From: Octopus sinensis | Lineage: Eukaryota | Assembly (NCBI RefSeq): GCF_006345805.1 | Contig: NC_043010.1 | Coordinates: forward strand, 66,092,001-66,156,000 | DNA length: 64,000 nucleotides | Direction of reading: 5' to 3' | Part shown: piece by piece, positions 2,962 to 51,700 of the stretch | Layout: every line of letters begins with the position of its first letter | Numbering within the stretch: position 1 is the first letter of the stretch | Position numbers and translations under genes: made by a program | Notes under the pieces: model-generated | The model's database searches: none | What the model saw: only the letters and a program-made list of their open reading frames with translations | Told to the model about the DNA's origin: nothing

Positions 2962-5900
2962 AGTGTGTATACACAAACCACTGCATCGTGTATACTCAGT
3001 TTTTCTCTCAACTCATTTCAGCTCTGACATTCATTATCATCATTATCATCATTGTCATCATCGTCATCATCATCATCACCACTTCACATCCATCTTCCAT
3101 GCAGACATGGGTCGAACAGCTTGACAGGAGGAGCCAGCAAGCCAGAGGGACTGTACCAAGCTCTACTATCTGCTTTGATATAGTTTCCTTGGCTGCGTGC
3201 CCTTCCTAACACCAACCACACTAACGTTACACATCCATCAGGGCAGGTCCCTTCATTTCCTCAGATTTTGCACATCTGCTGCACCCAGTATCCACGTTAT
3301 GCCACCAAGTAACATTACACTTCATACACAAGCATCATGCAATTTGCCCTTCAAGCAAAGAGAAAAATCTCTTTGTTGCTTGCAAAATACCCCATTCTTA
3401 TCCTGGCTACAATGCTTTCATAAGCATTGTAGGTGCAGGAGTGGCTGTGTGGTAAGTAGCTTGCTAACCAACCACATGGTTCCGGGTTCAGTCCCACTGC
3501 ATGGCATCTTGGGCAAGTGTCTTCTGCTATAGCCCCGGTGGGCCGACCAATGCCTTGTGAGTGGATTTGGTAGACGGAAACTGAAAGAAGCCTGTCGTAT
3601 ATATATATATATATGTGTGTGTGTTTGTGTGTCTGTGTTTGTACCCCTAGCATTGCTTGACAACCGATGCTGGTGTGTTTACGTCCCCGTAACTTAGCGG
3701 TTCGGCAAAAGAGACCGATAGAATAAGTACTGGGCTTACAAAGAATAAGTGCTGGGGTCGATTTGCTCGACTAAAGGCAGCGCTCCAGCATGGCCGCAGT
3801 CAAATGACTGAAACAAGTAAAAGAGTAAAGAGAGAGCAAAGAGTATAACACACACCTCCACTGCTGTTTAAGTCAGCAAAATAACAGAAGCTCTCAGCTA
3901 TATCCCTCAAGGTGCCTTCTGAGCATTTGGAAGAATTTATGTCTTGGCTACTTGTTTTTATGGAAACTTATAAAAAGTTTGTAAAAAAAAAAAATGAAAA
4001 AACGAGAAATGCCAGAAATGGATGTGTAAACTCGACTGTGGCTGTTTTTGAAATTATATGTTTGGGACAAATTTACTCCTTGCACTCTGAAAAAGACAAA
4101 TTGGGTGAAGACGAGTCAACTCGTCTTTTCCGGGTAAGGGCTTAAAAACCACTTTCTCTATCCCAACCATGGGGTGGTCACAGTTCCGGAACACCCTTTG
4201 ATTATAGTCTTTCTTCTTGGTCAAGGCTGACCAGGGCTAAACAACATCAACAACAACAGCAAGAAACACCACCGCCACCACCACCACCACCACTGCCAGC
4301 ACCTCCACCGCCACCGCCACCACCTCCACCACTACCACCACCTCTTCCTCCTCCACCACCAGCACCACCAGCACCACCAGCACCATTTCAACCATGTAAC
4401 CGCACAGGTGTGCTTCTCCTGGACTTTCTCCTTCTTGGTGCTTTTCCTTTCTCTTCTTTCCAACAAAGAGCTATGCTCGAAACATAACCCCCCCCCCCGC
4501 CTACACTGATCATCAAGCTAATACATTCCTATGTATATTCTTTTGTTATTTTATTTGTTATTTTTAATGTTCAGATTTTAATGTTTCATTTGACTACCTA
4601 GGGATAGGAGGGTGTAAGGGGAACTGGTTGCTTCTTTACACTTTTGGGGTGCAACTTGGGTGCAACACAATTTCCTTTCTTTTTGTTTCTAGTAACTACC
4701 AGTCAGGAACGAAACGCAAGTTTAGAAATATATACAATTCTTTATTCTCTTATTCAACAATGAAACACGATGGTATACTGGTATCCATTCTTACAACAAT
4801 TCAGCATTAATAGAACAGGTTAAATCCCAAGCGTCTGGGACAGGAGTATAAGCTGATCACACGTATGAAAATACGTCCTTTCTCTTCTATCGCCGTGTCT
4901 CAAGTTCCCGACGCTATTAAGGAACGCTATAGAATTTATTCTTCAGTCTCTAGCGCATGTGCATGAGGGAACTTCCTTATGCCTTTCCAGAAGGTTCCAG
5001 AAGGTTCCAACCCCGCACACGCACACTGAAGAAGGACGTCCGCACACGCACACTGAAGAATGACGTTGCATGTGTGCACACTGGAATATGACGTCACTAC
5101 AAGGGTATTAATGAGATGAAGGGCAAAAATCTCAAACCGTAAATGGACATCTAAAAGATTTCAAATGAACCCACCTCGAATGCACCTTGCTTGAGATTGA
5201 AAACTCACTCAAACTTTCCCATGAAAAGGAAAGGACAGAAAAGGAAGCCAGGGCTGTCAAAAACATTAAAGCATACCCTAAGGCCTTCTATAGATACGCG
5301 AAAAAATCTGCTTCAGTGCGTTACAAAATAGGACCACTACTATAGGAAAATGGCTCACCAACTGCGGACCCCCAGGGGATTAGTGAATTACTGAATGCAC
5401 AATACAAGAGTGCTCTCAGCATACCATTGGGGAAGCTACGAGTGAATGTGCTGGATAGGTTCTTTGACCCCAAAGACATGCATTGTGAAATGGCAACTAT
5501 TGATAACATCAACATAGAGGAAACTGATGTGATACCAGCCATTGAAGAGCTGAGCTTGAACTTGGAGATGGGCCCTGATGGATTCCCTGCAATCCTTCTA
5601 AAGAAATGTAAAAGAGCTCTAGCTAGACTGCTTCAAATCCTTTTCCAGGAGGCCCTCAGGATGGGCAAACTCCCCAAAAAACTAAAAGAGGTAATAATAT
5701 GCCCTATCCACAAAGGAGGAAGCAGGGCAGAGGCTAGGAATTATAGACCTGTCTCCCCGACCTCTCACGTCAGTAAAGTCATGGAGCACATTGTCAAGAA
5801 AAGACTGATTGAGTTCCTTGAGGACAATGACCTGCTTTCTGACACCTGACATGGCTTTCGCCTGGGAAGGAGCTGTCTTACACAGCTTCTGTGACACTAT

Positions 5901-7302
5901 GACTGGGTACTGAAGTAATTAATGAACTGCTCAAAGGTGGATGTGGTATAACTCGACTTTGCGAAGGCAGTTGACAAGGTCAGCCATGGAATGATATGCC
6001 ACAGAATACGGGGACTCAGCCAGAGAGTGGTTGCATGATTTCCTAAAGGACAGGAGCCAAACTGTAGCAGCCAAAGAAGCTCTCTCCACAGAGACACCAA
6101 TAGTGAGTGGAGTGCCCCAGGGCACTGTGCTGGGGCCACTGCTTTTCATGGTAGCCCTATTGGATATGCCATCAGTGACAGAGGCAACCATGCTGACCAG
6201 CTATGCCAATGACACAAAAGTCGCACAGTCAGTCAAGGAAACCTCTTATGCTTCGCTCTTACAGAAAGATCTAGATACCATCTATACATGGGCTGAGGAT
6301 AACAACATGCAATTTAATGCAAGTAAATTCCAGGCCCTCCACTACCAGTTAAGCACTACACAGGAATCATGACATCAGTATGTTGGACCAAGTGGAGAAA
6401 TGATCCCAGAATCAAATACGGTGCGTGATCTTGGAATAGAAATGAGCAACAATGCCTCATTTCACACACAAATCAACAAAATGGTAGCAGTATCCAGAAG
6501 ACTGGCCGGTTGGATTCTGAGAACCTTCCGGATAAGGGACCAAGACACTATGATGACACAATGGAAGTCCTTTATCCTCAGCCGACTGGAGTACTGCTCT
6601 CAGTTGCATGTAAACACTCTTTGGGATGGTGTGATCCATAACAGTTCACCTTGCTGTTGATTGTCGACCAATGTAGAGGATCTGTTGACTAAGTCACCTC
6701 CAGTTATCGGAGCAGACATAGCCTGGGTCTAAAGTGGGTTCTGGAGATATACTTTAAGAAAATCTGATGGGTGCCACATTCTCAGTGGCCTTCCAGCATG
6801 TCAGACACCAACCTGGAATTTCTAAGGAAACATTTTATTGCTAAATAGTGGTTAAACCTATACTAAAGTTCACTCACCCTTTTGACAGGTTTTTCAGTCC
6901 TGCTGGGTTTCTAGCAATCCTCCTCACCAGGCAAGCCTAGTGCAGGTACCAGTTTAGTCGCTGACAACCCAACCATGCAACAGGTTGTACTGGATTCTAT
7001 GTTACCAATTGAACTTCTGAGAAACCTCACAAGTGACCTGACACACAGTCATACCTGTGGGTAATTCCATTTTCACATTTACCCACTTCTTCCCTTCAGT
7101 CTTCTGATATTTTCATTGTATTTCGAAAGCTTATCCATCTTCATCTGTTTCAAATTTACAGGAAATAGTCGGCGGTTTTCTGATGGTTCCGTGAATGTCG
7201 AATTTAAACAGAACTTCTACAAAGAACTTGACAAACGGCTTAAGGATATGAACTTTGCGGTATGGGTTACATCTGCTGTTTGTATTTTAGCATTGTGTTT
7301 AT

Positions 7303-8814: not shown

Positions 8815-11800
8815 TCTGTGTGTGCATGTGTGTGTATGTGTATACACAAAAGGGTGCTGAAAAGTTTGTGAAGGCCTGGTTGGAGGCCCACCCTTCCAAA
8901 TTCTTTTTATAGGGCTTAGAAAAACTGAAGGGCCACTGCAATAAGTGTGTGAACCTGAGAGGTGAATCTGTTGAATGGAATCATAATGAACTGATCCTCC
9001 TGCATTTTCTTTTACCCACAACCAGGAACCTTTCAGCACCCCCTAGTAGAGCCCCTAATGGGTCTTAATCTAGACTTACTGCAAATAAAGTATACAAAAT
9101 AGCATTGAGAGATGTTTTGTTATTCAAATGTAGCTTGTTGTCTTGTTTTCAGGATTCCCATACGCCATCACCAGAGTCCATCCACAACAACAACAACACA
9201 AATAACGATTTAGAGGTGTACGCCGATGTCGTTGATGTCCAGGTAGGTGGAATGGGTGGACTCCATCTGAGCTGATCAAGTTTTTTTGGAGTCTACCATT
9301 TTTTACTCTATACCTATTTCTTTACTACCCACAAGGGGCTAAACACAGAGGGGACAAACAAGGACAGACATAGGTATTAAGTCGATTACATCGACCCCAG
9401 TGTGTAATTGGTACTTAATTAATCGACCCCGAAAGGATGAAAGGCAAAGTCGACCTCAGCGGAATTTGAACTCAGAACGTAGCGACAGACGAAATACGGC
9501 TACGCATTTCGCCCGGCGTGCTAACATTTCTGCCAGCTCGCCACCCTTATTACTCTATACCACTGCCATCATCATCACTGCCACCACCACCACTACCATG
9601 ACCGATACCATTATCACTACTGCTACCATTTCCATCATTACTAACACCATCAACATCACCACTACCACCATCATTATTCAGAGACCCCCTTCGGTCATGA
9701 ATGACCATAGTATTGCACCTAGAAAGTTACCCTGCCAGGCATAAGTCTGGCAAGGTTGTTTATGGAAGACCAGCCATCGTCCATGCATGCCAGCCTCCTC
9801 TCTCCTCGCCACCAGTGTTATCCAAGGGAAAGGCAAAGGGGCCGATACAGCTTGGCACCTGTCACGTCGCAACTCATTTCTACAGCTGAGTAAACTGAAG
9901 CAACGTGAAATAAAATGTCTTGATCTGACAGAGGGGAGAAAATCAGGTGTAGTGTTGGCAAATCTCAGGAAGCATGGAAATTTTGAAGGATGCAGTGCTC
10001 CGACAACTAAAAACTGATGCCGGCAGTTTGTTCCATGCTTCAGCGACTCTCAACGTGAAAAAAATGTTTCTGAAAGTCATGGGATCTGTGCTGTTTTCTG
10101 ACTTTGTAGATATGTCCACGGGTGTTAGACAGGTGGAGTTTGGAAAGGTGCTCAGAGTTATTGTTAGTAAGATGGTTAATAATTTTATGGGTTTCTGCCA
10201 AGTCAGCTGCCAGACGTCGGAGTTTCAATGTGTCCATGCCCAGGGAAGTAAGGTGTTCAGAATATGGCAAATGCCTGATGGAGGGTATTCTTTTGGTTGC
10301 ATGTTGCTGAACGGCTTCCAGACGATTAATATCCTGGGCAAGATAGGGGTTCCAGACCAGTGATGCAAATTCCAGGTGAGGTCTTACCATAGCTATATAA
10401 AGCCACAGATAGATAGCTGGGGAGCAGCTCACAAAGATGAATGGCAGAATCAAAAGAAAAGGATGACCCTACTTTGATGTGTTCCTTAATGAGCCATGAA
10501 CTAATTTAGGATTTCCTTTCAGAAATGGAAGCCACACGAGCCATGGTATTTTCATACAGTTGACAAATCGAAAGAAGAACGGCTGCTGCGTAAAATCAGT
10601 CAGGTAAGTTGGCTAAATTAATTGTTTTAATGGGAAATCACAGCACAGCACAGCCATTACTTCCAAAACCACCATGAACAAATGAACTCATGAGCATGTT
10701 CACACACATGCACACACACACACACACACACACACTCATGTACATGTGCAAACACACATGCACATATTCACACATGTATGCATGCATATGTGCACACGTA
10801 CACACACACACTCACGTGCAAACACACACACATGTGCACGCATGCACACGTGCAAACACACACGTGCATATACACACACACACATATGCATGCACATGTG
10901 CACACATACACTTACACACACAGACATTCACGTGCAAACACACTTGCACACACACACACGTACACATAATGAACATGTGCACACACACACACACACTCAC
11001 ATATATTATCTTTTCTATTTTACTTGTTTTCAGTCATCACACTCTGGCCATGCTGGGGCACTGCCTGGAAAAGTTTTGGTCAGCTGAATCGACCCCAGTA
11101 CCTATGTTTTGTTAAGGCCTCATACTTATTCTGTTAGTCTCTTTTTGCCGAACTGCTAAGTTACAGACATACAAACACCAACACTGGTTGTCAAGCAGTG
11201 GTGGGGAGAGAAACACACACATATATGCACATAAGCGAGCGGGCCAACAGAAGAAAGAGTGAGAGAAAGTTGGGGCGAAAGAGTACAACAGGGGTCGCCA
11301 CCACCCCCTGCCAGAACCTCATGGAGCTTTTGGTGTTTTCACTCAATAAACGCACACAACGCCCGGTCTGGGAATTGAAACTGCGATCCTACGACTGCGA
11401 GTCTGCTGCCCTAACCACTGGGCTATTGCGCCTCCGCGCTTCTATACTACAATGCTTCAAGCAAACTTCAGCACTCTTCTTTAGTTTTGTTAATCCTACT
11501 TCCTACTTATTTTATATTCTATCTTATTCCAACAGGACGGAGCATTCCTCGTTCGGGACAGCAGGAGTTACAAACCTGACCAGCCGTTCACTCTGACCGT
11601 CTTTTATCATAATCGCCTGTTTTCCGTCAAGATTCGTCAGCTGCCCTCAGGACAGTTTGTATTAGGCGAGGAAAAACATGATCAAGTGGTAATTACAGGA
11701 AAATATTTTCATAATATTTCATTTTTGGATTTGGTTTGCAAGATTCTTGATATGAGTTCGTGTGTTGAAGCATATTCTGTTGTGTCTGGGGAGAGTCATT

Positions 11801-13362
11801 TTCTTTTTGTGCCTTATAATGTAACACAATGATAAATCTCAGAGCGAGTTATAAACAGTAGCAGCAACACATTGTGACGTATATTTGCCATTTGAATATG
11901 GCTAACCCCTAAGGGTGGATGCTACTGTAGTTTGTAGCCCCAGGAGGACACCTCCTCCAGCTGGCTATAGACACTTTCTGTGCCCTATCAGTATTTGCAA
12001 AGGGCACAGAAAGTGTGTCTATAGCCAGCTGGAGGAGGTGTCCTCCTGGGGCTACAAACTACAGTAGCATCCACCCTTAGGGGTTAGCCATATTCAAATG
12101 GCAAATATACGTCACGAAATGTAACACACTCACCGGTAAAATTTCCACTTATTTCTTATTTTTAATATTTCTTATTTTTAATAAGATTGTAAATAACGGA
12201 CTGAGTCAAGACTATTGAAAAGGTTGCAAGACGCAACGAAAATTTTAAGAAAATAAGAAATAAGTGGAAATTTTACCGGTGAGTGTATTACATAATAAGG
12301 CACAAAAAGAAAGTGACTCTCCTCAGACACAACAGAATTTTTATAATGTATTTGAACAGTTGATGTTAGATATTACATGTTCTGATTTGAGAGAGGTTAG
12401 AAAAATAGGCTGAGTAATAGGGGGTTGATGAGACATGTATTTATCAATTACTAGGGAACTTGTGGTGACTGTAGGTATGGATGTGTGACTAAAAAATTCA
12501 CCTTGTGAACTCATGGTTCCTGGTTTCAATCCTACAGCACAATGTTTTGTGCAAGTGCCTGCACAAGGTGTCATGTAACAGAACCAAACTGAAAACCGCT
12601 TGGCTGCAAAGCGGGTTTCTTAACCCCCGCAGCCTTACTCTCTTTTACTCTTTTACTTGTTTCAGTCATTTGACTGCGGCCATGATGGAGCACTGCCTTT
12701 AGTCCAGCAAATCGACCCCAGGACTTATTCTTTGTAAGCCCAGTACTTATTCTATCGGTCTCTTTTGCCGAACCGCTAAGTGACGGGGACGTAAACACAC
12801 CAGTATCGGTTGTCAAGCAATGCTAGTGGGACAAACACACACACACATACACATATATATATACATATATACGACAGGCTTCTTTCAGTTTCCGTCTACC
12901 AAATCCACTCACAAGGCATTGGTCGGCCCGGGGCTATAGCAGAAGACACTTGCCCAAGATGCCACGCAGTGGGACTGAACCCGGAACCATGTGGTTGATA
13001 AGCAAGCTACTTACCACACAGCCACTCCTACGCCTTGACTGTCTCTATTAATTCTTATATTGTTATATAAATGTGATTCAGCATTAACTTACTTTTGTTC
13101 ATTAAAACATTCTTAAAATATTTTACACGTGCAAAAAAAAATAAATAAATAGAATAAAAAAAAAAAAAAAAAAAAAAAAATAAAATAAAATAAAATACAA
13201 TAAACCAGTTGATGAATGATTGTTCCAAAAATCTCGTTTTTTCTATTGCAGAAATTTGAAACTGTGGAGAAACTCATCTCGCACTACCGGAAAAGTACAT
13301 TGTTACTCCTTGGAAAAGGTGGCGGACGTATTACACTGACCCAGTACCCATCCAGTTATTAA
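1298..13362 (+). CDS. SH2-domain adaptor protein (SLP-76/BLNK/CLNK-like or SH3BP2-like), multi-exon; 5' exons tentative
   Basis: Phase-consistent chain 1298-1313, 2503-2627, 3912-4133, 4260-4407, 7162-7259, 9153-9242, 10523-10603, 11536-11688, 13252-13362 (TAA). The C-terminal SH2 reads [65 protein letters not shown], compare SLP-76 LRKINQDGTFLVRDS. The last five exons are well supported; the first four are inferred. Confidence 0.8.
1411..1648 (-). mobile_element. SINE family A (3' half)
   Basis: Family consensus. Confidence 0.8.
2503..2627 (+). CDS. Candidate upstream exon of SH2 adaptor
   Basis: actttgcag|(F)[41 protein letters not shown]|gtaagt; only the phase-1 frame is open. Confidence 0.6.
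3431..3830 (+). mobile_element. SINE family A (full)
   Basis: Family consensus. Confidence 0.9.
3912..4133 (+). CDS. Candidate upstream exon of SH2 adaptor
   Basis: ccctcaag|[16 protein letters not shown]...DESTRLFR|gtaagg; open, phase 0-0; no family motif recognised. Confidence 0.5.
4260..4407 (+). CDS. SH2 adaptor proline-rich exon (acceptor uncertain: 4226, 4235 or 4260)
   Basis: [49 protein letters not shown](G)|gtgtgc; phase-1 end matches the 7162 exon. Confidence 0.6.
5110..6610 (+). mobile_element. Decayed CR1/L2-like LINE ORF2 (reverse transcriptase) in SH2 gene intron
   Basis: [59 protein letters not shown] (YADD decayed), VRDLGI; several stops and frameshifts. Confidence 0.9.
7162..7259 (+). 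CDS. SH2 adaptor exon
   Basis: atttacag|(G)[32 protein letters not shown]|gtatgg; phase 1-0. Confidence 0.75.
7306..8360. repeat. CA-rich minisatellite (~70-80-bp unit, ~13 copies)
   Basis: cacacatggacacaatgacactgacacagccacacacactcacac..atactcacaatcacacacacacacatc. Confidence 0.93.
8843..9048 (+). mobile_element. Internally deleted mariner element (MITE)
   Basis: Inverted ends gggtgctgaaaagtt / aacctttcagcaccc with TA flanks; retains transposase C-terminus [18 protein letters not shown]...[11 protein letters not shown]. Confidence 0.75.
9153..9242 (+). CDS. SH2 adaptor exon (Asn run, VYADV Tyr motif)
   Basis: gttttcag|[30 protein letters not shown]|gtaggt; phase 0-0. Confidence 0.8.
9315..9545 (-). 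mobile_element. tRNA-headed SINE family C
   Basis: Reverse strand ggcgagctggcaga..gttctgagttcaaattcc..gcctttcatcctttcggggtcg..ccccttgtgggtagtaaagaaa; other copies at 23480-23710 and 57610-57840, partial at 43050-43200 and 59530-59720. Confidence 0.85.
9940..10400 (-). mobile_element. CR1-like LINE 3' fragment
   Basis: [20 protein letters not shown]...[13 protein letters not shown]...[16 protein letters not shown]. Confidence 0.85.
10523..10603 (+). CDS. SH2 adaptor exon (SH2 start)
   Basis: cctttcag|[27 protein letters not shown]|gtaagt. Confidence 0.9.
11011..11200 (-). mobile_element. SINE family A (3' half, diverged)
   Basis: Family consensus. Confidence 0.7.
11536..11688 (+). CDS. SH2 adaptor exon (FLVRDS core)
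   Basis: ttccaacag|[51 protein letters not shown]|gtaatt. Confidence 0.93.
11774..12338. mobile_element. Long-TIR MITE with a nested foldback insertion
   Basis: Outer TIR 11774-11817 / 12295-12338 continues as 12119-12162 / 12249-12293; inner hairpin arms 11874-11986 / 12001-12115. Confidence 0.8.
12636..13034 (-). mobile_element. SINE family A (full)
   Basis: Family consensus. Confidence 0.9.
13252..13362 (+). CDS. SH2 adaptor terminal coding exon
   Basis: ctattgcag|[36 protein letters not shown]; AATAAA at 13745-13750 downstream. Confidence 0.9.
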
Positions 13363-25375: not shown

Positions 25376-26179
25376 TTGGCGATGTTTCGCATGTCGTAGC
25401 ACAAGTTTCCGTCGATTTCCGTAAAAAACTTTTATTTTTTTACATAAGTAATGAGAGCGAAAGAGACTAAGAGGAAGCGATTTTATGACGAGGAAGTTTC
25501 TCTTTGAAGTGCGCGTGTGTGTGTTTGATGGGGTGTAGGAGACAGACAGTATGTTGTGTAAGTGAAGTGCTTCTGTTAGTGTGTGTGAAGAGACAGAGAG
25601 AGTAATGTGTGAAAGAGAGAGATAACTGATTTTTTACTCGGTGTATGTGTATATGTATGTATGCATGTATGTGTGTGTGTGTGTGTGTGTATGTATGTGT
25701 GTATGTATGTATGTATCTATGTATGTGTGTGTGTGTATGTATGTATGTATGGCCGATTCATCGTAATTACGATGAATCGGCCATACATACATACTTACAC
25801 ACACACACATACATAGATACATACATACATACACACATACATAGATACATACACACACACATACATAGATACATACACACACACATACATGCAGACATAC
25901 ATATACACATACACCGAGTAAAAAATCAGTTATCTCTCTCTTTCACACATTACTCTCTCTGTGTCTTCACACACACTAACAGAAGCACTTCACTTACACA
26001 ACATACTGTCTGTTTCCCACACCCCATCAAACACACACACGCACACTTCAAAGAGAAACTTCCTCGTCATAAAATCGCTTCCTCTTAGTCTCTTTCGCTC
26101 TCATTACTTATGTAAAAAAATAAAAGTTTTTTACGGAAATCGATGGAAACTTGTGCTACGACAACCGAAACGTTGCCAA
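25376..26179. repeat. ~800-bp foldback with loopless palindromic centre
   Basis: Centre ggccgattcatcgtaa|ttacgatgaatcggcc at 25766/25767; arms ~390-410 bp, nearly identical outside the internal microsatellite. Confidence 0.95.
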
Positions 26180-26599
26180 AAAGGCAGCAGACTTCAACTT
26201 CACTTGTTACTCTGGAAACATGCACCAAGATGGCATTGGTTTTTGATTGGTTAAAATTACTCAAAATTTGTAAACTTTAAAAGCTATTAACTTGTTATTT
26301 CTTAATTTATGGCAAAAATGAATTTCATTTTTGTAATTAGCATACAAAACTAAATTAGTATACCATATTTGGAAGGAAATTTATAAAAAAAATAGAAAAC
26401 TGTGATTTGTGGTTAACTGTAATATTGTTTTTTGCTTTTTTTTCCCCCAGGTTCTTTATTTAAAATTGGAATTATAGTAAGAGAAAACAAAAAAACAAGA
26501 CCAACTTGAAAAATAATTTTAATAGCTACAGAAACAGCATTAAAACCAAAAGGTAATATTTTTCCTCACTGGAAAGCAGATGTGTTAGATTGGGAAACA

Positions 26600-27562
26600 A
26601 TGGCAGAAAGGAAAGGTCAATATCCTGAATATTCTTTCGAATCTGGCCAACGTTATTGCATTTTTTTTTGTAATGAGTTTTCAGGCCAGTCAAAAGAGCG
26701 AAAAGGAGTAGGTGATGAAATTAAAAAAATAAACAAAATTTTCAAAGACAGATTGGGTTTTCACATAGTATATAAGAAGAACAAAAGTTTGAAGGAAACC
26801 AAAAAGATTCTGGAAAATATTTCAGAGGAATACAAAGAGGAAATGAAATGCGTAGAGAATGAAATGGAAATGATAGAGGAAAAAATGGCAGAGAATAATT
26901 CCATGGAAGAAAAACTAAATGGAATTAAAAAGAGGGTGAAAGAAATGGAAAGTGGAAAGACAGGGGTAAGGAAAATAATCGCAGACGAAATAAAGGAAAT
27001 GCAAAAAGTGAAAGAGGAAAATGAAAAGGAGGAAAACAAAAAGAAAGGAATCATAGAGGAAATGGAAAAGGATAACAAAGACAGACCACTCAGTTGTTTT
27101 GTTTTAATCTTCTCTTCTCATGGTAGTGAGGGTATGATTCAAGCTAGCGATGGTCAGTCTGTAACTTACAAAGAAATTAATGATTACTTAAATATTCCGC
27201 TTTTGAAAGATGTGCCCAAAGTACTTTACCTCAGTGCTTGTCGCAATAAAATAAAAGGTGTTAATAAATGTGATTTATTTCAATCTTTTGATATTCCTGA
27301 CATGCTTGTAATGCTAGCTGTGCCTTCTGGGGATTCTGGTAAGAGAACTGACTATACTGGTAGTCGTTTCTTAAACTCAGTATATGAAATTTATTCAAAG
27401 AACGAAGACATCGATGTCATGTCACTGGCTGTTGATATTAATGATCATCTTTACATATATAAACAGAAGACTGATGTTGAACAAAAGGCTGTATGCTTTA
27501 GTACTTTGAAGAAAAGACTGATTATTAAAAAAAAAGAACAATCAGAAAAGCAAAAGGAGTGA
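26600..27562 (+). CDS. Caspase-family (clan CD) cysteine protease, single coding exon, 320 aa, with internal coiled-coil-like insertion
   Basis: ATG in acaATGG context with in-frame TGA upstream at 26507-26509. Motifs: YCIFFCNEF (beta1), ERKGVGDE (RxGTxxD), CFVLIFSSHG (His at 27119-27121), PKVLYLSACRN (Cys at 27239-27241), p10-like DMLVMLA..GKR...GSRFLNSV and QKAVCFSTLKKRL. A candidate splice acceptor ttttcccccag at 26450 suggests a non-coding upstream exon. Confidence 0.9.
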   Translation: MAERKGQYPEYSFESGQRYCIFFCNEFSGQSKERKGVGDEIKKINKIFKDRLGFHIVYKKNKSLKETKKILENISEEYKEEMKCVENEMEMIEEKMAENNSMEEKLNGIKKRVKEMESGKTGVRKIIADEIKEMQKVKEENEKEENKKKGIIEEMEKDNKDRPLSCFVLIFSSHGSEGMIQASDGQSVTYKEINDYLNIPLLKDVPKVLYLSACRNKIKGVNKCDLFQSFDIPDMLVMLAVPSGDSGKRTDYTGSRFLNSVYEIYSKNEDIDVMSLAVDINDHLYIYKQKTDVEQKAVCFSTLKKRLIIKKKEQSEKQKE

Positions 27563-44500: not shown

Positions 44501-47500
44501 AAGGGCCATATGGAACCAGGTTGACCACCACTGTGCTAAGGGAACAATTTGATCTTAATTTTATTGTTCAGACCTTATGGAAAATAAAGGGAAATAAATT
44601 TGGGTTTTAGGGAACTCCTGGTGACTGCTAACCTCAAACTAAAGTTTTAAGGGTTTAAGTTAGATTATCTTAGTGTCACAAAAAAAAAGGTACCCAATGT
44701 GTAAAGTGGTTGGTGTTAGGAAGGACATCAAGCAATGGACCATCATACCAAAGCTGACATTAATGAAGACAATGATACAAAAATGTCCAAGAAACTGGAT
44801 CCAAAATTTTGTCAGTTAAATGTTGAACATTTGTTTTTGTCTCATTTGTTCCTTCAAGAATTGAGGTACACACAAACTGTTTTCAGGGTTTTTGCAATCT
44901 GATGTCTATTTTCCCATCAAGTGCCCTTGACGTAGCAGACACCAATTCTGAAAACTTAAAGGCCATTTAAACTACTGAATATATTTATATCATTTTCACA
45001 TGCAAGAAACAGTCTAATTACATTCTAAGAGAACATCTCTGCTATTAGAACTCATCATCATCATTGTTGTTTAATGTCTGCTTTCCATGCTGGTATGGGT
45101 TGGACGGTTTGACTGAGTGCTGGCAAGCCAGAAGGCTGCACCAGGCTCCAATCTGATCTGGCAATGTTTCTACAGTTGGATGCCCTTCCTAATGCCAACC
45201 ACTCAGAGTGTAGTGGATGCTTTTTACGTTCCACCAACATGGGAGCCAGTCAGGCTGCACTAGCATCTTCCACGCTCAAATGGTACTTTTTACATGCCAC
45301 CAGCACATGTGCCAGTTAAGGCTCCACTAGCATCTTCCATGCTTGAACAGTACTTTTTACATTCCACCAGCACGTGTGCCAGTCAGGCTGCCCTGGTGTC
45401 AACCACACTCGAATGGTGCTTTTTACGTGCCACCTGCATGTGTGCCAGTCAGGCTGCACTGGCATCAACCACACTCGAATGGTGCTTTTTACGTGCCACC
45501 TGCATGTGTGCCAGTCAGGCTGCCCTGGTGTCAACCACACTCGAATGGTGCTTTTTACGTGCCACCTGCATGTGTGCCAGTCAGGCTGCCCTGGTGTCAA
45601 CCACACTCAAATGGTGCTTTTTACGTGCCACCTGCATGTGTGCCAGTCAGGCTGCCCTGGTGTCAACCACACTCGAATGGTGCTTTTTACGTGCCACCTG
45701 CATGTGTGCCAGTCAGGCTGCACTGGCATCAACCACACTCAAATGGTGCTTTTTACGTGCCACCTGCATGTGTGCCAGTCAGGCTGCACTGGCATCAACC
45801 ACACTCAAATGGTGCTTTTTACGTGCCACCTGCATGTGTGCCAGTCAGGCTGCACTGGCATCAACCACACTCAAATGGTGCTTTTTACGTGCACCTGCAT
45901 GTGTGCCAGTCAGGCTGCACTGGCATCAACCCACTCAAATGGTGCTTTTTACGTGCCACCTGCATGTGTGCCAGTCAGGCTGCACTGGCATCAACCACAC
46001 TCAAATGGTGCTTTTTACGTGCCACCTGCATGTGTACCAGTCAGGCTGCACTGGCATCAACCACACTCAAATGGTGCTTTTTACGTGCCACCTGCATGTG
46101 TGCCAGTCAGGCTGCACTGGCATCTTCCATGCTTGAACAGTACTTTTTACATTCCACCAGCACGTGTGCCAGTCAGGCTGCCCTGGTGTCAACCACACTC
46201 AAATGGTGCTTTTTACGTGCCACCTGCATGTGTGCCAGTCAGGCTGCACTGGCATCAACCACACTCAAATGGTGCTTTTTACGTGCCACCTGCATGTGTG
46301 CCAGTCAGGCTGCACTGGCATCTTCCATGCTTGAACAGTACTTTTTACATTCCACCAGCACGTGTGCCAGTCAGGCTGCCCTGGTGTCAACCACACTCAA
46401 ATGGTGCTTTTTACGTGCCACCAGCATGTGTGCCAGTCAGGCGGCACTGGCATCAACCACACTCGAATGGTGCTTTTTACATGCCACCAGCATGTGAACC
46501 AGTCAGGCGGCACTGGCATCTTCCATGCTTGAATGATGCTTTTTACATGCCGCCAGCACAAACTAGTCAGGCGGCACTGGCATCAACCACACTCGAATGG
46601 TGCTTTTTACGTGCCACCGGCACACAAGCCATTCATGCGGCACTGGCATTGACCATGCGAGAACTATAGAATATAATAAATGTTCAGTTGTGCTAGTATA
46701 CAAGTATGGCCTAATTCTTCTTCCAAAATATTTATTAAAAAAAATAAAGTTGCTTGAAGCTTCATCATGGTTTTAATGTCCATTTTTTTTATGGGTTGGG
46801 CAAAATTAGTTGAGGTTGATTTTCTACAGCTGGATACTCTTCCTGATCCCAACCTTCACCTGTTTCCAAGTGATGCAATGTTTACCTTGCCCAGGCATAT
46901 TTTTCACAGAATATTGGAAATAAACAGCCTCGTTTATATGACAATGATGCTCATTTACAACCATCGCATGATGTCTAGACAAGGACACACATATATACGT
47001 ACACAAATACATACATACACTACCGTCAGAAATTAATTAGCACCCTTGATTTGCTCTTCACTCAAGGTATGTGCTGTCACCTAGTGGCCATATCTCGAAC
47101 TATTGCTTTGTTGCGAGTTCACTGTTGCGCAGAACGATGACGTAACTTTGTTTGCAGAGCAGTTTGAGAGTCTACAGCCTTATGATGTTGACATAGCAGT
47201 GCAACAACAACTTGGAGTGCGGATGCAGACAAATTCCTTTGTTTAATAGATATAGGTAGCGCCTCGCAAGGACCGAAATCACACCATACTAAGTTTTCTC
47301 ATCACGTAAGACGTTTTGAACAGCTCATAGGTTAATTGATTTAACCTATTTAATGTAGAAATTTGAGAAGTGCTAATTAATTTCTGACGCAAGTGTATAT
47401 ACATACACACTCATCCAGACATACATACATACATACATACACACACACAAAACTATATATGTTCTTGTAGGAAATTTAATGAACTAATACAAACTTCTTC

Positions 47501-48747: not shown

Positions 48748-51700
48748 CAACAATAATAATCCTTTCTACTAAAGGCACAAGGCCTGAAATTTGGGGGGAG
48801 GGGGCCAGTTGATTAGATTGACCCCAGTACGCAACTGGTACTTAGTTTATCGACCCCCATGGGCTCTATGATAAAAAGTATTTCATCATAGTTCTTTTGT
48901 TTATCAAGCACTACATTGGCCGATGTACCCTTCTTTACTTAAAACAATAAGGTGTGATTTGAGAGTGATTTCACTGGTATCTCTAGCAGGCCAAGTTATG
49001 ACCTAGAAGCTCCCTTGAGGTTTATAATTTCTAAAACTTTATTCCTTCACAAACCTTAACCCTTTCATTACTGTATTTATTTTGATATGTTCACTGTTTC
49101 TTTCAATTACTTTTGAATATAAAAAGGATTTAGTAAAATAACTTAGTTATCATTAAGCTAGTGTTAGGAACCTAAATTGTGACTTAGGTTTGGTGGAAGA
49201 ATTTAATTCAAAACATATGTAAACAAGATATTTGTACTCAGAGCCAGAGCTGGTTTCAGCCGGGTTGGTATTAAAAGGTTTAAACCAACTATATCCAACT
49301 AAAATATTCTGATTTATGTTCAAACTGGCTATATCCAGCCTCTCACACCTATCCTTCAATGTCATTTCAAGAAATAAACAATCATTTCATTGAAATCTCA
49401 AAGCCACAAGATAATGCAGGATTAATTCAAAACAGTGTGAATAATTAAGTATTAGATTTGACAGAGAAATCTGAATGCTAACGAGTTGTAAAAAAAAAAA
49501 AAAAAAAAAGCAGAAATAATAATGAACAAAAATTACCTGATCCCTGAAAACAGGTGACTGGAAGAAGAAGAAGAAAAGAAAACCATTTACCTGAAGGATT
49601 TTGATGGGGATGTCAGTATCATGCAGCTCTTCTTGGTAGTTCTCTAATATATAGAAAGCAGTCGCCCACAGAGTTAATACGAATTGCTGGCTGGTGATAC
49701 TTGCTCTGGGGAAAAAACAACAACAACATACAAATCATCATCATCATCATCATCATCGTTTAACGTCCGTTTTCCATGCTAGCATGGGTTTGACGGTTTG
49801 ACTGGGGTCTGGGAAGCCAGAAGGCTGCACCAGGCACAAGTCTGATCTGACAGTGTTTCTACAGCTGGATGCCCTTCCTAACGGTTTGACAGTTTGACTG
49901 GGGTCTGGGAAGCCAGAAGGCTGCACCAGGCTCCAGTCTGATCTGACAGTGTTTCTACAACTGGATGCCCTTCCTAACGGTTTGACGGTTTGACTGGGGT
50001 CTGGGAAGCCAGAAGGCTGCACCAGGCTCCAGTCTGATCTGGCAGTGTTTCTACAGCTGGATGCCCTTCCTAACGGTTTGACAGTTTGACTGGGGTCTGG
50101 GAAGCCAGAAGGCTGCACCAGGCTCCAGTCTGATCTGGCAGTGTTTCTACAGCTGGATGCCCTTCCTAACGGTTTGACGGTTTGACTGGGGTCTGGGAAG
50201 CCAGAAGGCTGCACCAGGCTCCAGTCTGATCTGACAGTGTTTCTACAGCTGGATGCCCTTCCTAACGGTTTGACGGTTTGACTGGGGTCTGGGAAGCCAG
50301 AAGGCTGCACCAGGCTCCAGTCTGATCTGGCAGTGTTTCTACAGCTGGATGCCCTTCCTAACGGTTTGACTGTTTGACTGGGGTCTGAGAAGCCAGACTG
50401 CACCAGGCTCAAGTCTGATCTGGCAGTGTTTCTACAGCTGGATGCCCTTCCTAACGCCAACCACTCCGTGAGTGTAGTGGGTGCTTTTTACGTGCCACCG
50501 GCACAGGGGCCAGGCAAGGCTGTCAACAGCCACGATCGGTTGGTGCTTTTTATGTGCCACCGGCACGGAAGCCAGTCAAGGTAGCGCTGGCATCAGCCAC
50601 GTTCGGACGGTGCTTTTTATGTGCCACCAGCACGGAAGCCAGTCAAGGCGGCGCTGGCATCAGCCACATTCGGATGGTGCTTTTTACGTGCCAGTGGCAC
50701 GGAAGCCAGTCAAGGCGGCGCTGGCATCAGCCACGTTCAGATGGTGCTTTTTATGTGCCACCGGCACGGAAGCCAGTCAAGGCGGCGCTGGCATCAGCCA
50801 CATTCGGATGGTGCTTTTTACGTGCCAGTGGCACGGAAGCCAGTCAAGGCAGCGCTGGCATCAGCCACGTTCGGACGGTGCTTTTTATGTGCCACCGGCA
50901 CGGAAGCCAGTCAAGGCGGCGCTGGCATCAGCCACATTCGGATGGTGCTTTTTACATGCCAGTGGCACGGAAGCCAGTCAAGGCGGCGCTGGCATCAGCC
51001 ACGTTCAGATGGTGCTTTTTATGTGCCACCGGCACGGAAGCCAGTCAAGGCAGCGCTGGCATCAGCCACGTTCAGATGGTGCTTTTTATGTGCCACCGGC
51101 ACAGGTATCACAACTACAATTTCCATTTGATTTTTTTGATGTTGATGTACTTGACTCAATAGGCCTCCTCAAGCACAGCAGGTCACCCTACAATCCAAGG
51201 ATGAGTACAAAGAAATACAACAACACAGAAAAAAAACTTGCTATCTGTCCTCCTCCAGATTCTTCTGACTCAACCATATCTTACGTTTTACTTATTTCAG
51301 TCATCGGAGCATGGCCATGCTGGGGCACTACCTTGAAAGGTTTAGTTCAGTGGTTCTCAACCAGGGTCCATATGGCCCCTGAAGGTCCATTTAAGACTTT
51401 TAAGGGTCCACACAACAAAATAGTAAATTGGGGATCCACAATGGACTGGAGCATCACAAAATGAAGTGTTTTGCTCAAGAACACAATGCCTCATCACCCA
51501 GTCCAGGAATCAAGAGTACAGTTTTATGCTCACAAGTGCAACACCCTAACCGCTGAGCCACACGCCTCCACCAGGTACTATACAAGTTGTTATATTATTA
51601 CATTAGTTGATATATAACTTATTATGCATATATTACATTAGTTACTATCTAAGTTACTATGTATAAGACATTAGTTACAGCATAAAGCAACAAATTGGCA

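What the first reader, a model, noticed from the sequence alone, without database searches (positions are those of the whole stretch)
26831..27070. Caspase with an ~80-residue coiled-coil hairpin inserted inside the p20 catalytic domain
Seen: between the helix KSLKETKKILENISEE and the strand leading to the catalytic His (RPLSCFVLIFSSHG) lie ~80 Glu/Lys/Met-rich residues. They show heptad-spaced hydrophobics (M88,V91,M95,I98,M102; L112,I115,V119,M122), a GKTG turn, then a second amphipathic run (V129,I133,I137,M140...I157,M161). Known: in caspase-3/7/8 this link is only about 6-8 residues (DHSKRSS in caspase-3), and caspases normally recruit or oligomerise through N-terminal CARD/DED prodomains. 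Inference: this prodomain-less caspase carries an antiparallel coiled-coil stalk projecting from the protease core, which could replace a prodomain for dimerisation, adaptor binding or localisation. I know of no described caspase with this architecture.
Basis: partly seen in the sequence, partly recalled or inferred. Interest (0 to 1): 0.88.

Follow-up and report, generated by a model that had tools for sequence, protein, structure and literature searches.

The report
Octopus caspase with inserted helical hairpin
A fast-evolving octopus caspase really does carry about 80 extra residues inside its catalytic domain. They are predicted to fold into a long two-helix arm pointing away from the active site, which is an unusual but so far function-less variant of a well-known protease.

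Summary
Window 26600-27562 (+) is one open frame of 320 codons encoding a Peptidase_C14 caspase, already in NCBI as 'caspase-14-like' of Octopus vulgaris/sinensis. The link between helix alpha2 and strand beta3 is 0-7 residues in 62 of 65 aligned relatives. Here it is about 85 residues.

- **Coding status.** The insert is 82% purine, in frame and unique in the genome. No plausible splice acceptor lies inside it. It is identical in the sister species, whereas the flanks differ by 2%.
- **Fold.** AlphaFold2 with an alignment gives a caspase core plus helix 74-116, a turn and helix 124-156 (mean pLDDT 87.8). Hydrophobic periodicity modestly exceeds shuffled controls.
- **Rarity.** The reciprocal-best relative in Argonauta hians lacks the insert. 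So do 31 other single-exon octopus caspases, 92 remote relatives and all PDB caspases.
- **Active site.** The catalytic His/Cys and both S1 arginines are kept. The Gln of QACRG is Ser.

Function is untested. In a canonical head-to-tail caspase dimer the two arms would point in opposite directions. I therefore favour a docking or higher-order assembly handle over a dimerisation device. A tolerated passenger insertion is not excluded. Low-complexity inserts occur in this same loop in two other caspases. I rate it a new variant of a known kind, of moderate interest.

The parts
26600..27562 (+). Complete single-exon coding sequence of the caspase (320 codons plus TGA stop)
   Evidence: Open frame. 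Pfam Peptidase_C14, 67.5 bits against a cut-off of 21.4. 98% identical to XP_029644994.1 / CAI9733267.1 'caspase-14-like'.
26600..26830 (+). Residues 1-77: beta1, alpha1, beta2 and the native part of alpha2, including S1-pocket Arg34 (26699-26701)
   Evidence: AF2 secondary structure E17-24, H37-51, E55-60, H64-72. R34 aligns with R in 55 of 65 homologues. Caspase-7 alignment.
26834..27088 (+). Inserted segment by comparison with the Argonauta orthologue: residues 79-163 stand where Argonauta has three residues (TNE) between the shared Tyr and Leu-Ser-Cys.
   Evidence: Alignments and codon comparison. 82% purine against 56% in the rest of the CDS. Unique in the genome at DNA and protein level.
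26819..26947 (+). Arm 1: predicted helix, residues 74-116, continuous with alpha2
   Evidence: AF2 with 65-sequence alignment, block pLDDT 78-93. Heptad and moment statistics.
26948..26968 (+). Turn, residues 117-123 (ESGKTGV)
   Evidence: Non-helical in both AF2 runs.
26969..27067 (+). Arm 2: predicted return helix, residues 124-156. Its last third (EENEKEENKKKG) is very polar and less confident.
   Evidence: AF2 block pLDDT 76-85, falling to 58 for residues 151-160. Moment P about 0.02.
27119..27121 (+). Catalytic His174 (CAT) in FSSHG
   Evidence: Invariant in 65 of 65 aligned homologues. Sequence read.
27239..27241 (+). Catalytic Cys214 (TGT) in SACRN, the variant of QACRG
   Evidence: C in 64 of 65. 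The preceding Gln is Ser here (Q in 49 of 65, S in 4).
27344..27346 (+). S1-pocket Arg249 (AGA) of the small-subunit part
   Evidence: R in 51 of 65. Aligned with the caspase-7 Arg.
26449..26509 (+). Strong splice acceptor (ttttttttcccccAG|G) and a short stretch ending in TGA 26507-26509, in the same frame as the caspase ORF. Probably the start of the caspase exon (5' UTR).
   Evidence: Sequence. Pyrimidine fraction 0.95 before the AG. The O. vulgaris annotation ends the upstream SH2 gene at exactly this TGA. The 160 nt before the ATG are identical in the sister species apart from one extra T in the pyrimidine run before the acceptor AG.

Best explanation
This is a genuine, translated, lineage-specific insertion of about 82 codons in the alpha2-beta3 link of a prodomain-less, single-exon cephalopod caspase.

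Structure (predicted): the insert prolongs helix alpha2 by about 39 residues, turns at ESGKTG and returns as a second helix. The result is an antiparallel two-helix arm about 55-60 A long. It leaves the protease core at the end opposite the active site, so the catalytic machinery is not disturbed: His174, Cys214, Arg34 and Arg249 are all kept.

Origin (inferred): it arose within the exon, on the Octopus branch after the split from Argonauta, from purine-rich sequence. It was not copied from another gene or from a repeat.

Function (inferred, not shown): because the two arms of a canonical head-to-tail caspase dimer would point in opposite directions, the arm most likely serves as a docking or exosite surface. 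Alternatively it could serve as a handle for assembly beyond the dimer, giving a caspase that lacks CARD or DED a means of recruitment. It is unlikely to drive the core dimerisation itself.
For: - **Caspase identity and insert position:**
- **Coding:** the frame is open while the two other forward frames have 10 and 4 stops. No in-frame GT..AG pair has a pyrimidine tract: 0.15-0.35 against 0.75-0.95 at real acceptors nearby.
- **Conservation between the two Octopus genomes:** no indel in the CDS and 0 of 240 substitutions in the insert, against 2.0% in 4.4 kb of flanks (P=0.014).
- **Structure:** AF2 with 65 sequences gives pLDDT 87.8 and pTM 0.80, with H74-116 and H124-156. The core matches caspase-7/-8/-3 with TM 0.75-0.85 normalised to the target. 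No PDB chain covers the insert.
- **Periodicity:** amphipathic periodicity exceeds shuffles, and the E-to-K i/i+4 pattern of single alpha-helices is not enriched.
- **Origin:** insert DNA and peptide have no other copy in the 2.7 Gb genome. Internal repeats are no stronger than in codon shuffles.
- **Timing:** Argonauta hians GAB1604245.1 is the reciprocal best hit, is sister in the tree (96/74) and has TNE in place of the insert.
- **Rarity:** the distance from the S1 Arg motif to the catalytic His is 140 residues here and 56-63 in the octopus paralogues in which that motif was found.
Against: - No expression, splicing or protein evidence could be obtained. There was no hit in an O. vulgaris mucus proteome supplement and no transcript-derived copy in the protein collections.
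- The insert is low-complexity, and the gene is the most divergent of the octopus caspases, with a long branch.
- Between the two Octopus species there are 6 nonsynonymous changes to 1 synonymous, plus a premature stop three codons from the end. Protein-level constraint is therefore not demonstrated.
- The proximal third of arm 2 is highly polar and of low confidence.
- Packing of the two helices against each other was not inspected.
- The functional part is inference only.
Confidence: 0.5

Rival explanations
1. Tolerated passenger. A purine-rich low-complexity expansion landed in a structurally permissive surface loop of a redundant, fast-evolving paralogue. It may be helical but has no specific function.
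For: - The insert is 82% purine and E/K-rich.
- The same loop carries unrelated low-complexity inserts in two other caspases, P0036 and P0068.
- Another octopus paralogue has about 45 extra residues in the intersubunit linker.
- The genome holds about 35 intact single-frame caspase domains, so redundancy is plausible.
- pN/pS is about 1.35 with no power.
- No orthologue was found in other annotated octopods.
Against: - Hydrophobic periodicity is above composition-matched shuffles (P 0.005-0.02).
- AF2 predicts long helices with confidence.
- There is no substitution or length change in a tract that should be slippage-prone, while the flanks differ by 2% and carry many indels.
- There is no residual repeat structure.
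Confidence: 0.33
2. The segment is not part of the mature protein. It could be an unrecognised intron, or the gene could be a decaying, untranscribed copy.
For: Several GT and many AG dinucleotides lie inside the segment, including GGGGTAAGG at 26966. There is no transcript or peptide evidence. The sister species has a nonsense change at codon 318.
Against: - No candidate acceptor has a pyrimidine tract, and no in-frame pair removes the whole insert.
- The frame stays open through 80 codons, where composition predicts about 6 stops.
- CDS divergence (0.83%) is lower than in the flanks (2.0%, P=0.010), with no indels.
- Both independent annotations keep the segment as coding.
- The catalytic residues are intact.
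Confidence: 0.07
3. Regulatory arm. In the dimer the arm lies on the side of the partner's active site and acts as a steric gate, an autoinhibitor or a substrate-selecting exosite.
For: Geometry inferred from the head-to-tail caspase dimer: the N-terminal end of beta3 of one protomer faces the same side as the partner's active site (established caspase structures; core fold confirmed). In oysters, long lineage-specific inserts in the intersubunit linker were shown to inhibit activation (PMC11543851).
Against: By strand order, the base of the arm is about 30 A lateral to the partner's catalytic centre, and the arm is predicted to point outward. No dimer model could be made.
Confidence: 0.1

Closest known systems
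Effector-type caspases (caspase-7, -3, -8 protease domains; e.g. PDB 4jr2, 1f1j, 4ps1)
   Same: Same fold (Foldseek E about 1e-15, TM 0.75-0.85 on the target). His-Cys dyad and both S1 arginines present. Pfam PF00656.
   Different: About 82 extra residues sit between alpha2 and beta3, where these enzymes have only a short link. SACRN replaces QACRG. The intersubunit linker is short (about 20 residues from Cys214 to beta5). There is no prodomain, and sequence identity is only 14-17%.
Argonauta hians 'caspase-14-like' GAB1604245.1 (P0003, 225 aa)
   Same: Reciprocal best hit and sister in the tree. Also a single-exon CDS with no prodomain. Shares the anchors ...Y and LSC...SSHG on either side of the loop.
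   Different: The loop is three residues (TNE). Identity is only 36-38%. The downstream neighbour differs: succinyl-CoA ligase rather than huntingtin.
CARD-bearing single-exon cephalopod caspases (octopus cluster on contig C26; Argonauta 'caspase-7-like' GAB1602177.1)
   Same: Sister clade (96/96). The CDS is also encoded in one open frame.
   Different: They carry an N-terminal CARD-like domain (Pfam CARD E 1e-4 to 7e-4, just under the cut-off) and a normal short alpha2-beta3 link.
Bivalve and gastropod caspase-3/6/7 with a long intersubunit linker (Wang et al. 2024, PMC11543851)
   Same: A lineage-specific intra-exonic insertion in a surface loop of an expanded molluscan caspase family. In oysters the insertion regulates activation.
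   Different: That insertion lies between the large and small subunits, not inside the large-subunit fold, and is not described as a helical hairpin.
Caspase P0036 (UniParc UPI000224A744) and P0068
   Same: Both have extra sequence in exactly the same alpha2-beta3 loop.
   Different: P0036 has five tandem KPVVVSKEV units (49 residues). P0068 has about 22 D/S/N-rich residues. Neither resembles the insert here in sequence.
Separase (clan CD, family C50) helical insert in its caspase-like pseudo-protease domain
   Same: A caspase-fold domain bearing a long helical, coiled-coil-like insertion used for inter-domain contacts. This is recalled from the separase structures of 2016-2017 and was not tested here.
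   Different: It is a different family, a different insertion point and part of a giant multidomain protein. No homology is implied.

Membership tests
Caspase (MEROPS C14A / Pfam Peptidase_C14) | Profile match above the curated threshold | tested here: met
   PF00656 at 67.5 bits against a cut-off of 21.4, in two stretches.
Caspase (MEROPS C14A / Pfam Peptidase_C14) | Catalytic His (SHG) and Cys (QACxG) dyad | tested here: met
   H174 aligns with His in 65 of 65 sequences and C214 with Cys in 64 of 65. The pentapeptide reads SACRN, so the Gln is replaced by Ser.
Caspase (MEROPS C14A / Pfam Peptidase_C14) | S1 pocket for Asp: two Arg plus the Gln of QACxG | tested here: inconclusive
   R34 and R249 are present. 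The Gln position is Ser, as in 4 of 65 relatives. The consequence for P1 specificity is unknown.
Caspase (MEROPS C14A / Pfam Peptidase_C14) | Caspase/haemoglobinase fold | tested here: met
   AF2 pLDDT 87.8. Foldseek top 50 hits are all caspases or CED-3, with TM on the target 0.73-0.85.
Caspase (MEROPS C14A / Pfam Peptidase_C14) | Asp-directed proteolytic activity and activation by dimerisation or cleavage | not testable with these tools
   Needs recombinant enzyme.
Vertebrate caspase-14 (the name given by the annotation) | Orthology to caspase-14 | tested here: inconclusive
   The gene falls in a clade with the Argonauta copy, an unidentified sequence (P0047) and the CARD-bearing cephalopod caspases. 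No vertebrate caspase-14 was placed in the tree. The name is an automatic one.
Antiparallel two-helix coiled-coil hairpin | Two long helices joined by a short turn | tested here: met
   H74-116, turn 117-123, H124-156. Also seen in the single-sequence run.
Antiparallel two-helix coiled-coil hairpin | Heptad (a/d) hydrophobic periodicity above chance | tested here: met
   Arm 1: 7 of 8 a/d positions in the best 28-residue window, P about 0.02; moment at 102.9 degrees P=0.005. Arm 2: a/d occupancy not significant (P=0.65), but moment P=0.022. The support is modest.
Antiparallel two-helix coiled-coil hairpin | Knobs-into-holes packing between the two arms | not testable with these tools
Needs inspection or an experimental structure.
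Single alpha-helix (SAH / ER-K) domain | Enrichment of E(i)-K/R(i+4) pairs and lack of a hydrophobic seam | tested here: not met
   The i/i+4 score is 0.081 against a shuffle mean of 0.100 (P=0.81), and a hydrophobic seam is present.
Spliceosomal intron | GT donor, AG acceptor with a pyrimidine tract, and removal restoring a normal loop | tested here: not met
   The 12 best-scoring of 38 in-frame GT..AG pairs have acceptor pyrimidine fractions of 0.15-0.35, against 0.75-0.95 at real acceptors. None of these 12 removes the whole insert.
Repeat- or transposon-derived or duplicated exon sequence | Other copies in the genome, or an internal tandem structure | tested here: not met
   The only other DNA match is a 67-nt, 80% low-complexity hit. 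The peptide has no match at E of 0.01 or better. Self-similarity is no greater than in codon shuffles (P=0.67), and arm 1 against arm 2 gives P=0.08.

The most novel reading that the evidence does not exclude
The helical arm is a functional recruitment or assembly module that substitutes for a death-fold prodomain. It would let a CARD/DED-less caspase be concentrated and activated (or targeted to a structure or substrate) through a coiled-coil contact. That would be a mode of caspase control not described so far, evolved de novo from purine-rich exon sequence within the octopus lineage.
Probability: 0.2. Interest if true: 0.7.

Novelty: new variant of a known kind. Interest (0 to 1): 0.42.

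Why it matters
Caspases are thought to be recruited and activated through N-terminal death-fold prodomains or by cleavage of the intersubunit linker. The large-subunit fold itself is very uniform in length.

A structured 80-residue arm inside that fold, born recently from low-complexity sequence, would matter in two ways. It would be a clean natural example of de novo gain of a structural module in an enzyme core. If functional, it would also be a new handle for caspase regulation.

It also adds to the picture of molluscan caspase families diversifying by intra-exonic loop insertions. If it is only a passenger, it still marks the alpha2-beta3 loop as a permissive site, which is useful for engineering tags or sensors into caspases.

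Tried and rejected
- **Intron reading.** Rejected on splice-signal grounds.
- **Copy of another gene, repeat or transposon.** Rejected: the insert is unique at DNA and protein level in the 2.7 Gb genome.
- **Recent tandem duplication or microsatellite expansion.** The repeat families listed by the repeat finder and TRF are no stronger than in codon-shuffled controls.
- **Single alpha-helix domain.** Not supported.
- **Upstream coding exons supplying a prodomain.** Both annotations and the Argonauta orthologue start at the same Met. The only upstream + strand gene is an SH2 adaptor with its own stop. A chimeric transcript is not excluded.
- **Single-sequence AF2.** Useless for the core (pLDDT 38.7).
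- **Profile search of the 5.8-billion-protein set.** Swamped by low-complexity words and returned only 3 proteins.
- **Searches for orthologues in other octopods.** The full-length search and the region 158-320 search both found only the sister-species copy.
- **MAFFT alignment of octopus paralogues.** It mis-aligned their N-terminal halves to the insert. I replaced it with a motif-distance measure.
- **Proteome supplement and literature searches.** These gave nothing on this protein or on coiled-coil inserts in caspases.
- **pN/pS between the two species.** No power, with only 7 changes.

Full report
**What is there.**
- The window lies on contig C14 of a 2.72 Gb octopus genome.
- Between a stop at 26507-26509 and a stop at 27560-27562, the + strand is open for 350 codons. 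From ATG 26600 it encodes 320 residues.
- Pfam assigns Peptidase_C14 (67.5 bits, cut-off 21.4) in two stretches.
- phmmer against PDB aligns caspase-7 on both sides of a gap. Its helix '...LLKKASEE' matches residues 34-77, and 'DH..ACFACILLSHG' matches residue 158 onward.
- The protein is already public. It is 98% identical to XP_029644994.1 / CAI9733267.1 / A0AA36FD74, 'caspase-14-like' of Octopus vulgaris, and the exact window protein is itself in NCBI.

**Is the insert coding?**
- It is 82% purine, against 56% for the rest of the CDS. Its reading frame is open, while the two other forward frames contain 10 and 4 stops. From its base composition I expect about 6 stops in 80 codons, so an open frame has a chance of roughly 0.002. 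This figure is my own calculation from the composition.
- Of 38 in-frame GT..AG pairs of 60 nt or more, the 12 best-scoring have pyrimidine fractions of 0.15-0.35 before the AG. The two real acceptors nearby have 0.75 and 0.95. None of those 12 removes the whole insert.
- In the sister-species genome (GCA_951406725.2, locus L010) the CDS has 8 substitutions in 963 nt and no indel. The 4.4 kb of aligned flanks have 2.0% substitutions and hundreds of gap columns (Fisher P=0.010).
- The insert itself has 0 of 240 substitutions (P=0.014 against the flanks; not different from the rest of the CDS).
- Of the 8 changes, 6 are nonsynonymous, 1 is synonymous and 1 is a stop at codon 318. pN/pS of 1.35 has no power.
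- I could obtain no transcript or peptide evidence.

**Structure.**
- A single-sequence AlphaFold2 run was poor (pLDDT 38.7) but already drew two long helices.
- With a 65-sequence alignment of remote caspases, the model reaches pLDDT 87.8 and pTM 0.80. The order of elements is beta1 17-24, alpha1 37-51, beta2 55-60, alpha2 64-72 running on as helix 74-116, a break at 117-123 (ESGKTGV), helix 124-156, then beta3 164-172 leading to His174.
- Block pLDDT over the insert is 76-93, dropping to 58 at residues 151-160.
- Foldseek against PDB returns only caspases and CED-3 (E about 1e-15). TM is 0.73-0.85 normalised to the target but about 0.58 normalised to the query, because no solved chain covers the insert.
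- Composition-preserving shuffles give the following:
  - Arm 1 a/d hydrophobic occupancy of 7 of 8, P about 0.02.
  - Hydrophobic moment at the coiled-coil angle, P=0.005 for arm 1 and P=0.022 for arm 2.
  - Arm 2 a/d occupancy not significant.
  - The E-to-K i/i+4 signature of single alpha-helices not enriched.
- Both arms are about 39 residues beyond the core, so the arm would be about 55-60 A long (inference). I could not inspect the packing of the helices, because coordinates are not exposed.

**Catalytic competence.** In the 65-sequence alignment, His174 is invariant and Cys214 is shared by 64 of 65. Arg34 (55 of 65) and Arg249 (51 of 65), the two S1 arginines, are present. The Gln of QACRG is Ser, so the motif reads SACRN. 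The stretch from Cys214 to beta5 is only about 20 residues.

**How unusual is it?**
- HMMER against 1.84 billion representatives found 94 relatives. Apart from the sister-species copy, the best is at 38% identity.
- Projecting the N- and C-terminal halves separately onto each relative showed the normal short link in essentially all of them.
- In the alignment, 62 of 65 sequences have 0-7 residues between the anchors.
- Two exceptions show that the loop is permissive. P0036 has five KPVVVSKEV repeats there, and P0068 has about 22 D/S/N-rich residues.
- Within the same genome, the Pfam model finds 53 matches and about 35 loci with the whole domain in one uninterrupted frame of 203-248 residues. 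The window gene is one of a minority matched only in part (positions 53-232), and its open frame continues upstream across the insert.
- The distance from the S1 Arg motif to the catalytic His is 140 residues here and 56-63 in the 24 paralogues where the regex found the true motif. In the other 8, where it caught a neighbouring or spurious motif, the listed values are 44-45 and 133.
- I found no paper describing such an insert.

**Origin and age.**
- The Argonauta hians protein GAB1604245.1 (225 aa, also a single-exon CDS) is the best non-Octopus hit of the window protein. The window gene is in turn its best hit in the octopus genome.
- In a maximum-likelihood tree the two are sisters (96/74). 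Together with P0047 they form the sister group of the CARD-bearing cephalopod caspases (96/96). The Octopus branch is long.
- Codon comparison shows shared anchors...TAC(Y) then TNE then LSC... in Argonauta, against ...TAC(Y) then 85 residues then LSC... in Octopus. The insert was therefore gained on the Octopus side (or, less simply, lost in Argonauta).
- Its DNA and its peptide have no other copy in the genome, and it keeps no repeat structure beyond its composition.
- I therefore infer growth in place from purine-rich sequence. It is old enough to have lost any repeat trace, or it was shaped by selection for helical periodicity.
- No orthologue turned up in other annotated octopods. This may mean loss, lack of annotation or a restricted distribution.

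**How it may work.**
- Shown or predicted: an intact caspase core with a two-helix arm leaving from the N-terminal end of beta3, the end of the sheet opposite the active site.
- From established caspase structures, protomers pair head to tail through beta6, with the active sites at opposite ends. The two arms of such a dimer would point in opposite directions and cannot zip together. Each would lie on the side of the partner's active site but about 30 A to the side of it. This is inference.
- I therefore rank the readings as follows:
  - A docking, exosite or higher-order assembly handle, 0.5.
  - A tolerated passenger, 0.33.
  - A regulatory gate, 0.1.
  - Not part of the mature protein, 0.07.
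- The oyster caspases with long inhibitory intersubunit linkers, which arose by intra-exonic insertion (PMC11543851), are the nearest documented precedent for loop insertions with a regulatory role in molluscan caspases.

**Verdict.** The functional half is open, and the dimerisation idea is geometrically unlikely in its simplest form. I rate this a new variant of a known kind, of moderate interest.

Noticed in passing
window 26449-26600 and 13252-13361 (+): The O. vulgaris annotation ends the upstream SH2-adaptor gene at the TGA at window 26507-26509. That fits a donor inside the SH2 gene's last exon (AAAAG|GTGGCG, 13318|13319) spliced to the strong acceptor at 26450|26451. This TGA is in the same frame as the caspase ORF, 30 codons before its ATG. 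The SH2 exon also has its own TAA at 13359-13361. This could reflect a read-through or chimeric transcript that carries the caspase exon, or an annotation artefact.
   Followed up: partly
G000 contigs C5 (16.04-16.19 Mb), C19 (12.34-12.41 Mb), C30 (9.96 and 13.11-13.15 Mb), C26 (15.12-15.16 Mb), C2731, C6349, C11409 and others: The octopus genome has a large expansion of caspase genes whose whole catalytic domain sits in one uninterrupted open frame. There are 53 Pfam matches and about 35 full-length loci, mostly in tandem clusters.
   Followed up: partly
L008/L009 = G000:C26:15128990-15129745 (-): One CARD-bearing paralogue (365-aa open frame) carries about 45 extra residues in the intersubunit linker (...NTCQFKHEKDNVPKGTDASSTKENTCRSETQVKVDAECSSAVESNSEKEYIGQYF...). 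This is another loop insertion in the family.
   Followed up: no
window 11494-11829 and 13252-13361 (+); window from about 37400 to at least 55500 (-): Neighbouring genes are an upstream SH2-domain gene on the + strand (Pfam SH2; by my reading BLNK/SLP-76-like) and the 3' part of huntingtin on the - strand. The Argonauta orthologue has a different downstream neighbour, succinyl-CoA ligase alpha.
   Followed up: partly
window 5346-6657 (+): Open frames that look like reverse transcriptase (...[20 protein letters not shown]...). This is probably a fragment of a non-LTR retrotransposon. The identification is by eye only.
   Followed up: no
window 45300-46700 and 49750-51500: Long minisatellite-like arrays give repetitive open frames of 240-440 codons on both strands (for example ...[22 protein letters not shown]... 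repeated). Related units are scattered through the window.
   Followed up: no
window 25376-26179: An inverted duplication rich in TG/CA microsatellite lies just upstream of the caspase exon. It matches itself in reverse at about 88%.
   Followed up: no
window 27551-27553 (codon 318): CAA (Gln) in the window genome is TAA (stop) in the O. vulgaris assembly, which shortens the E/K-rich C-terminal tail by three residues.
   Followed up: yes
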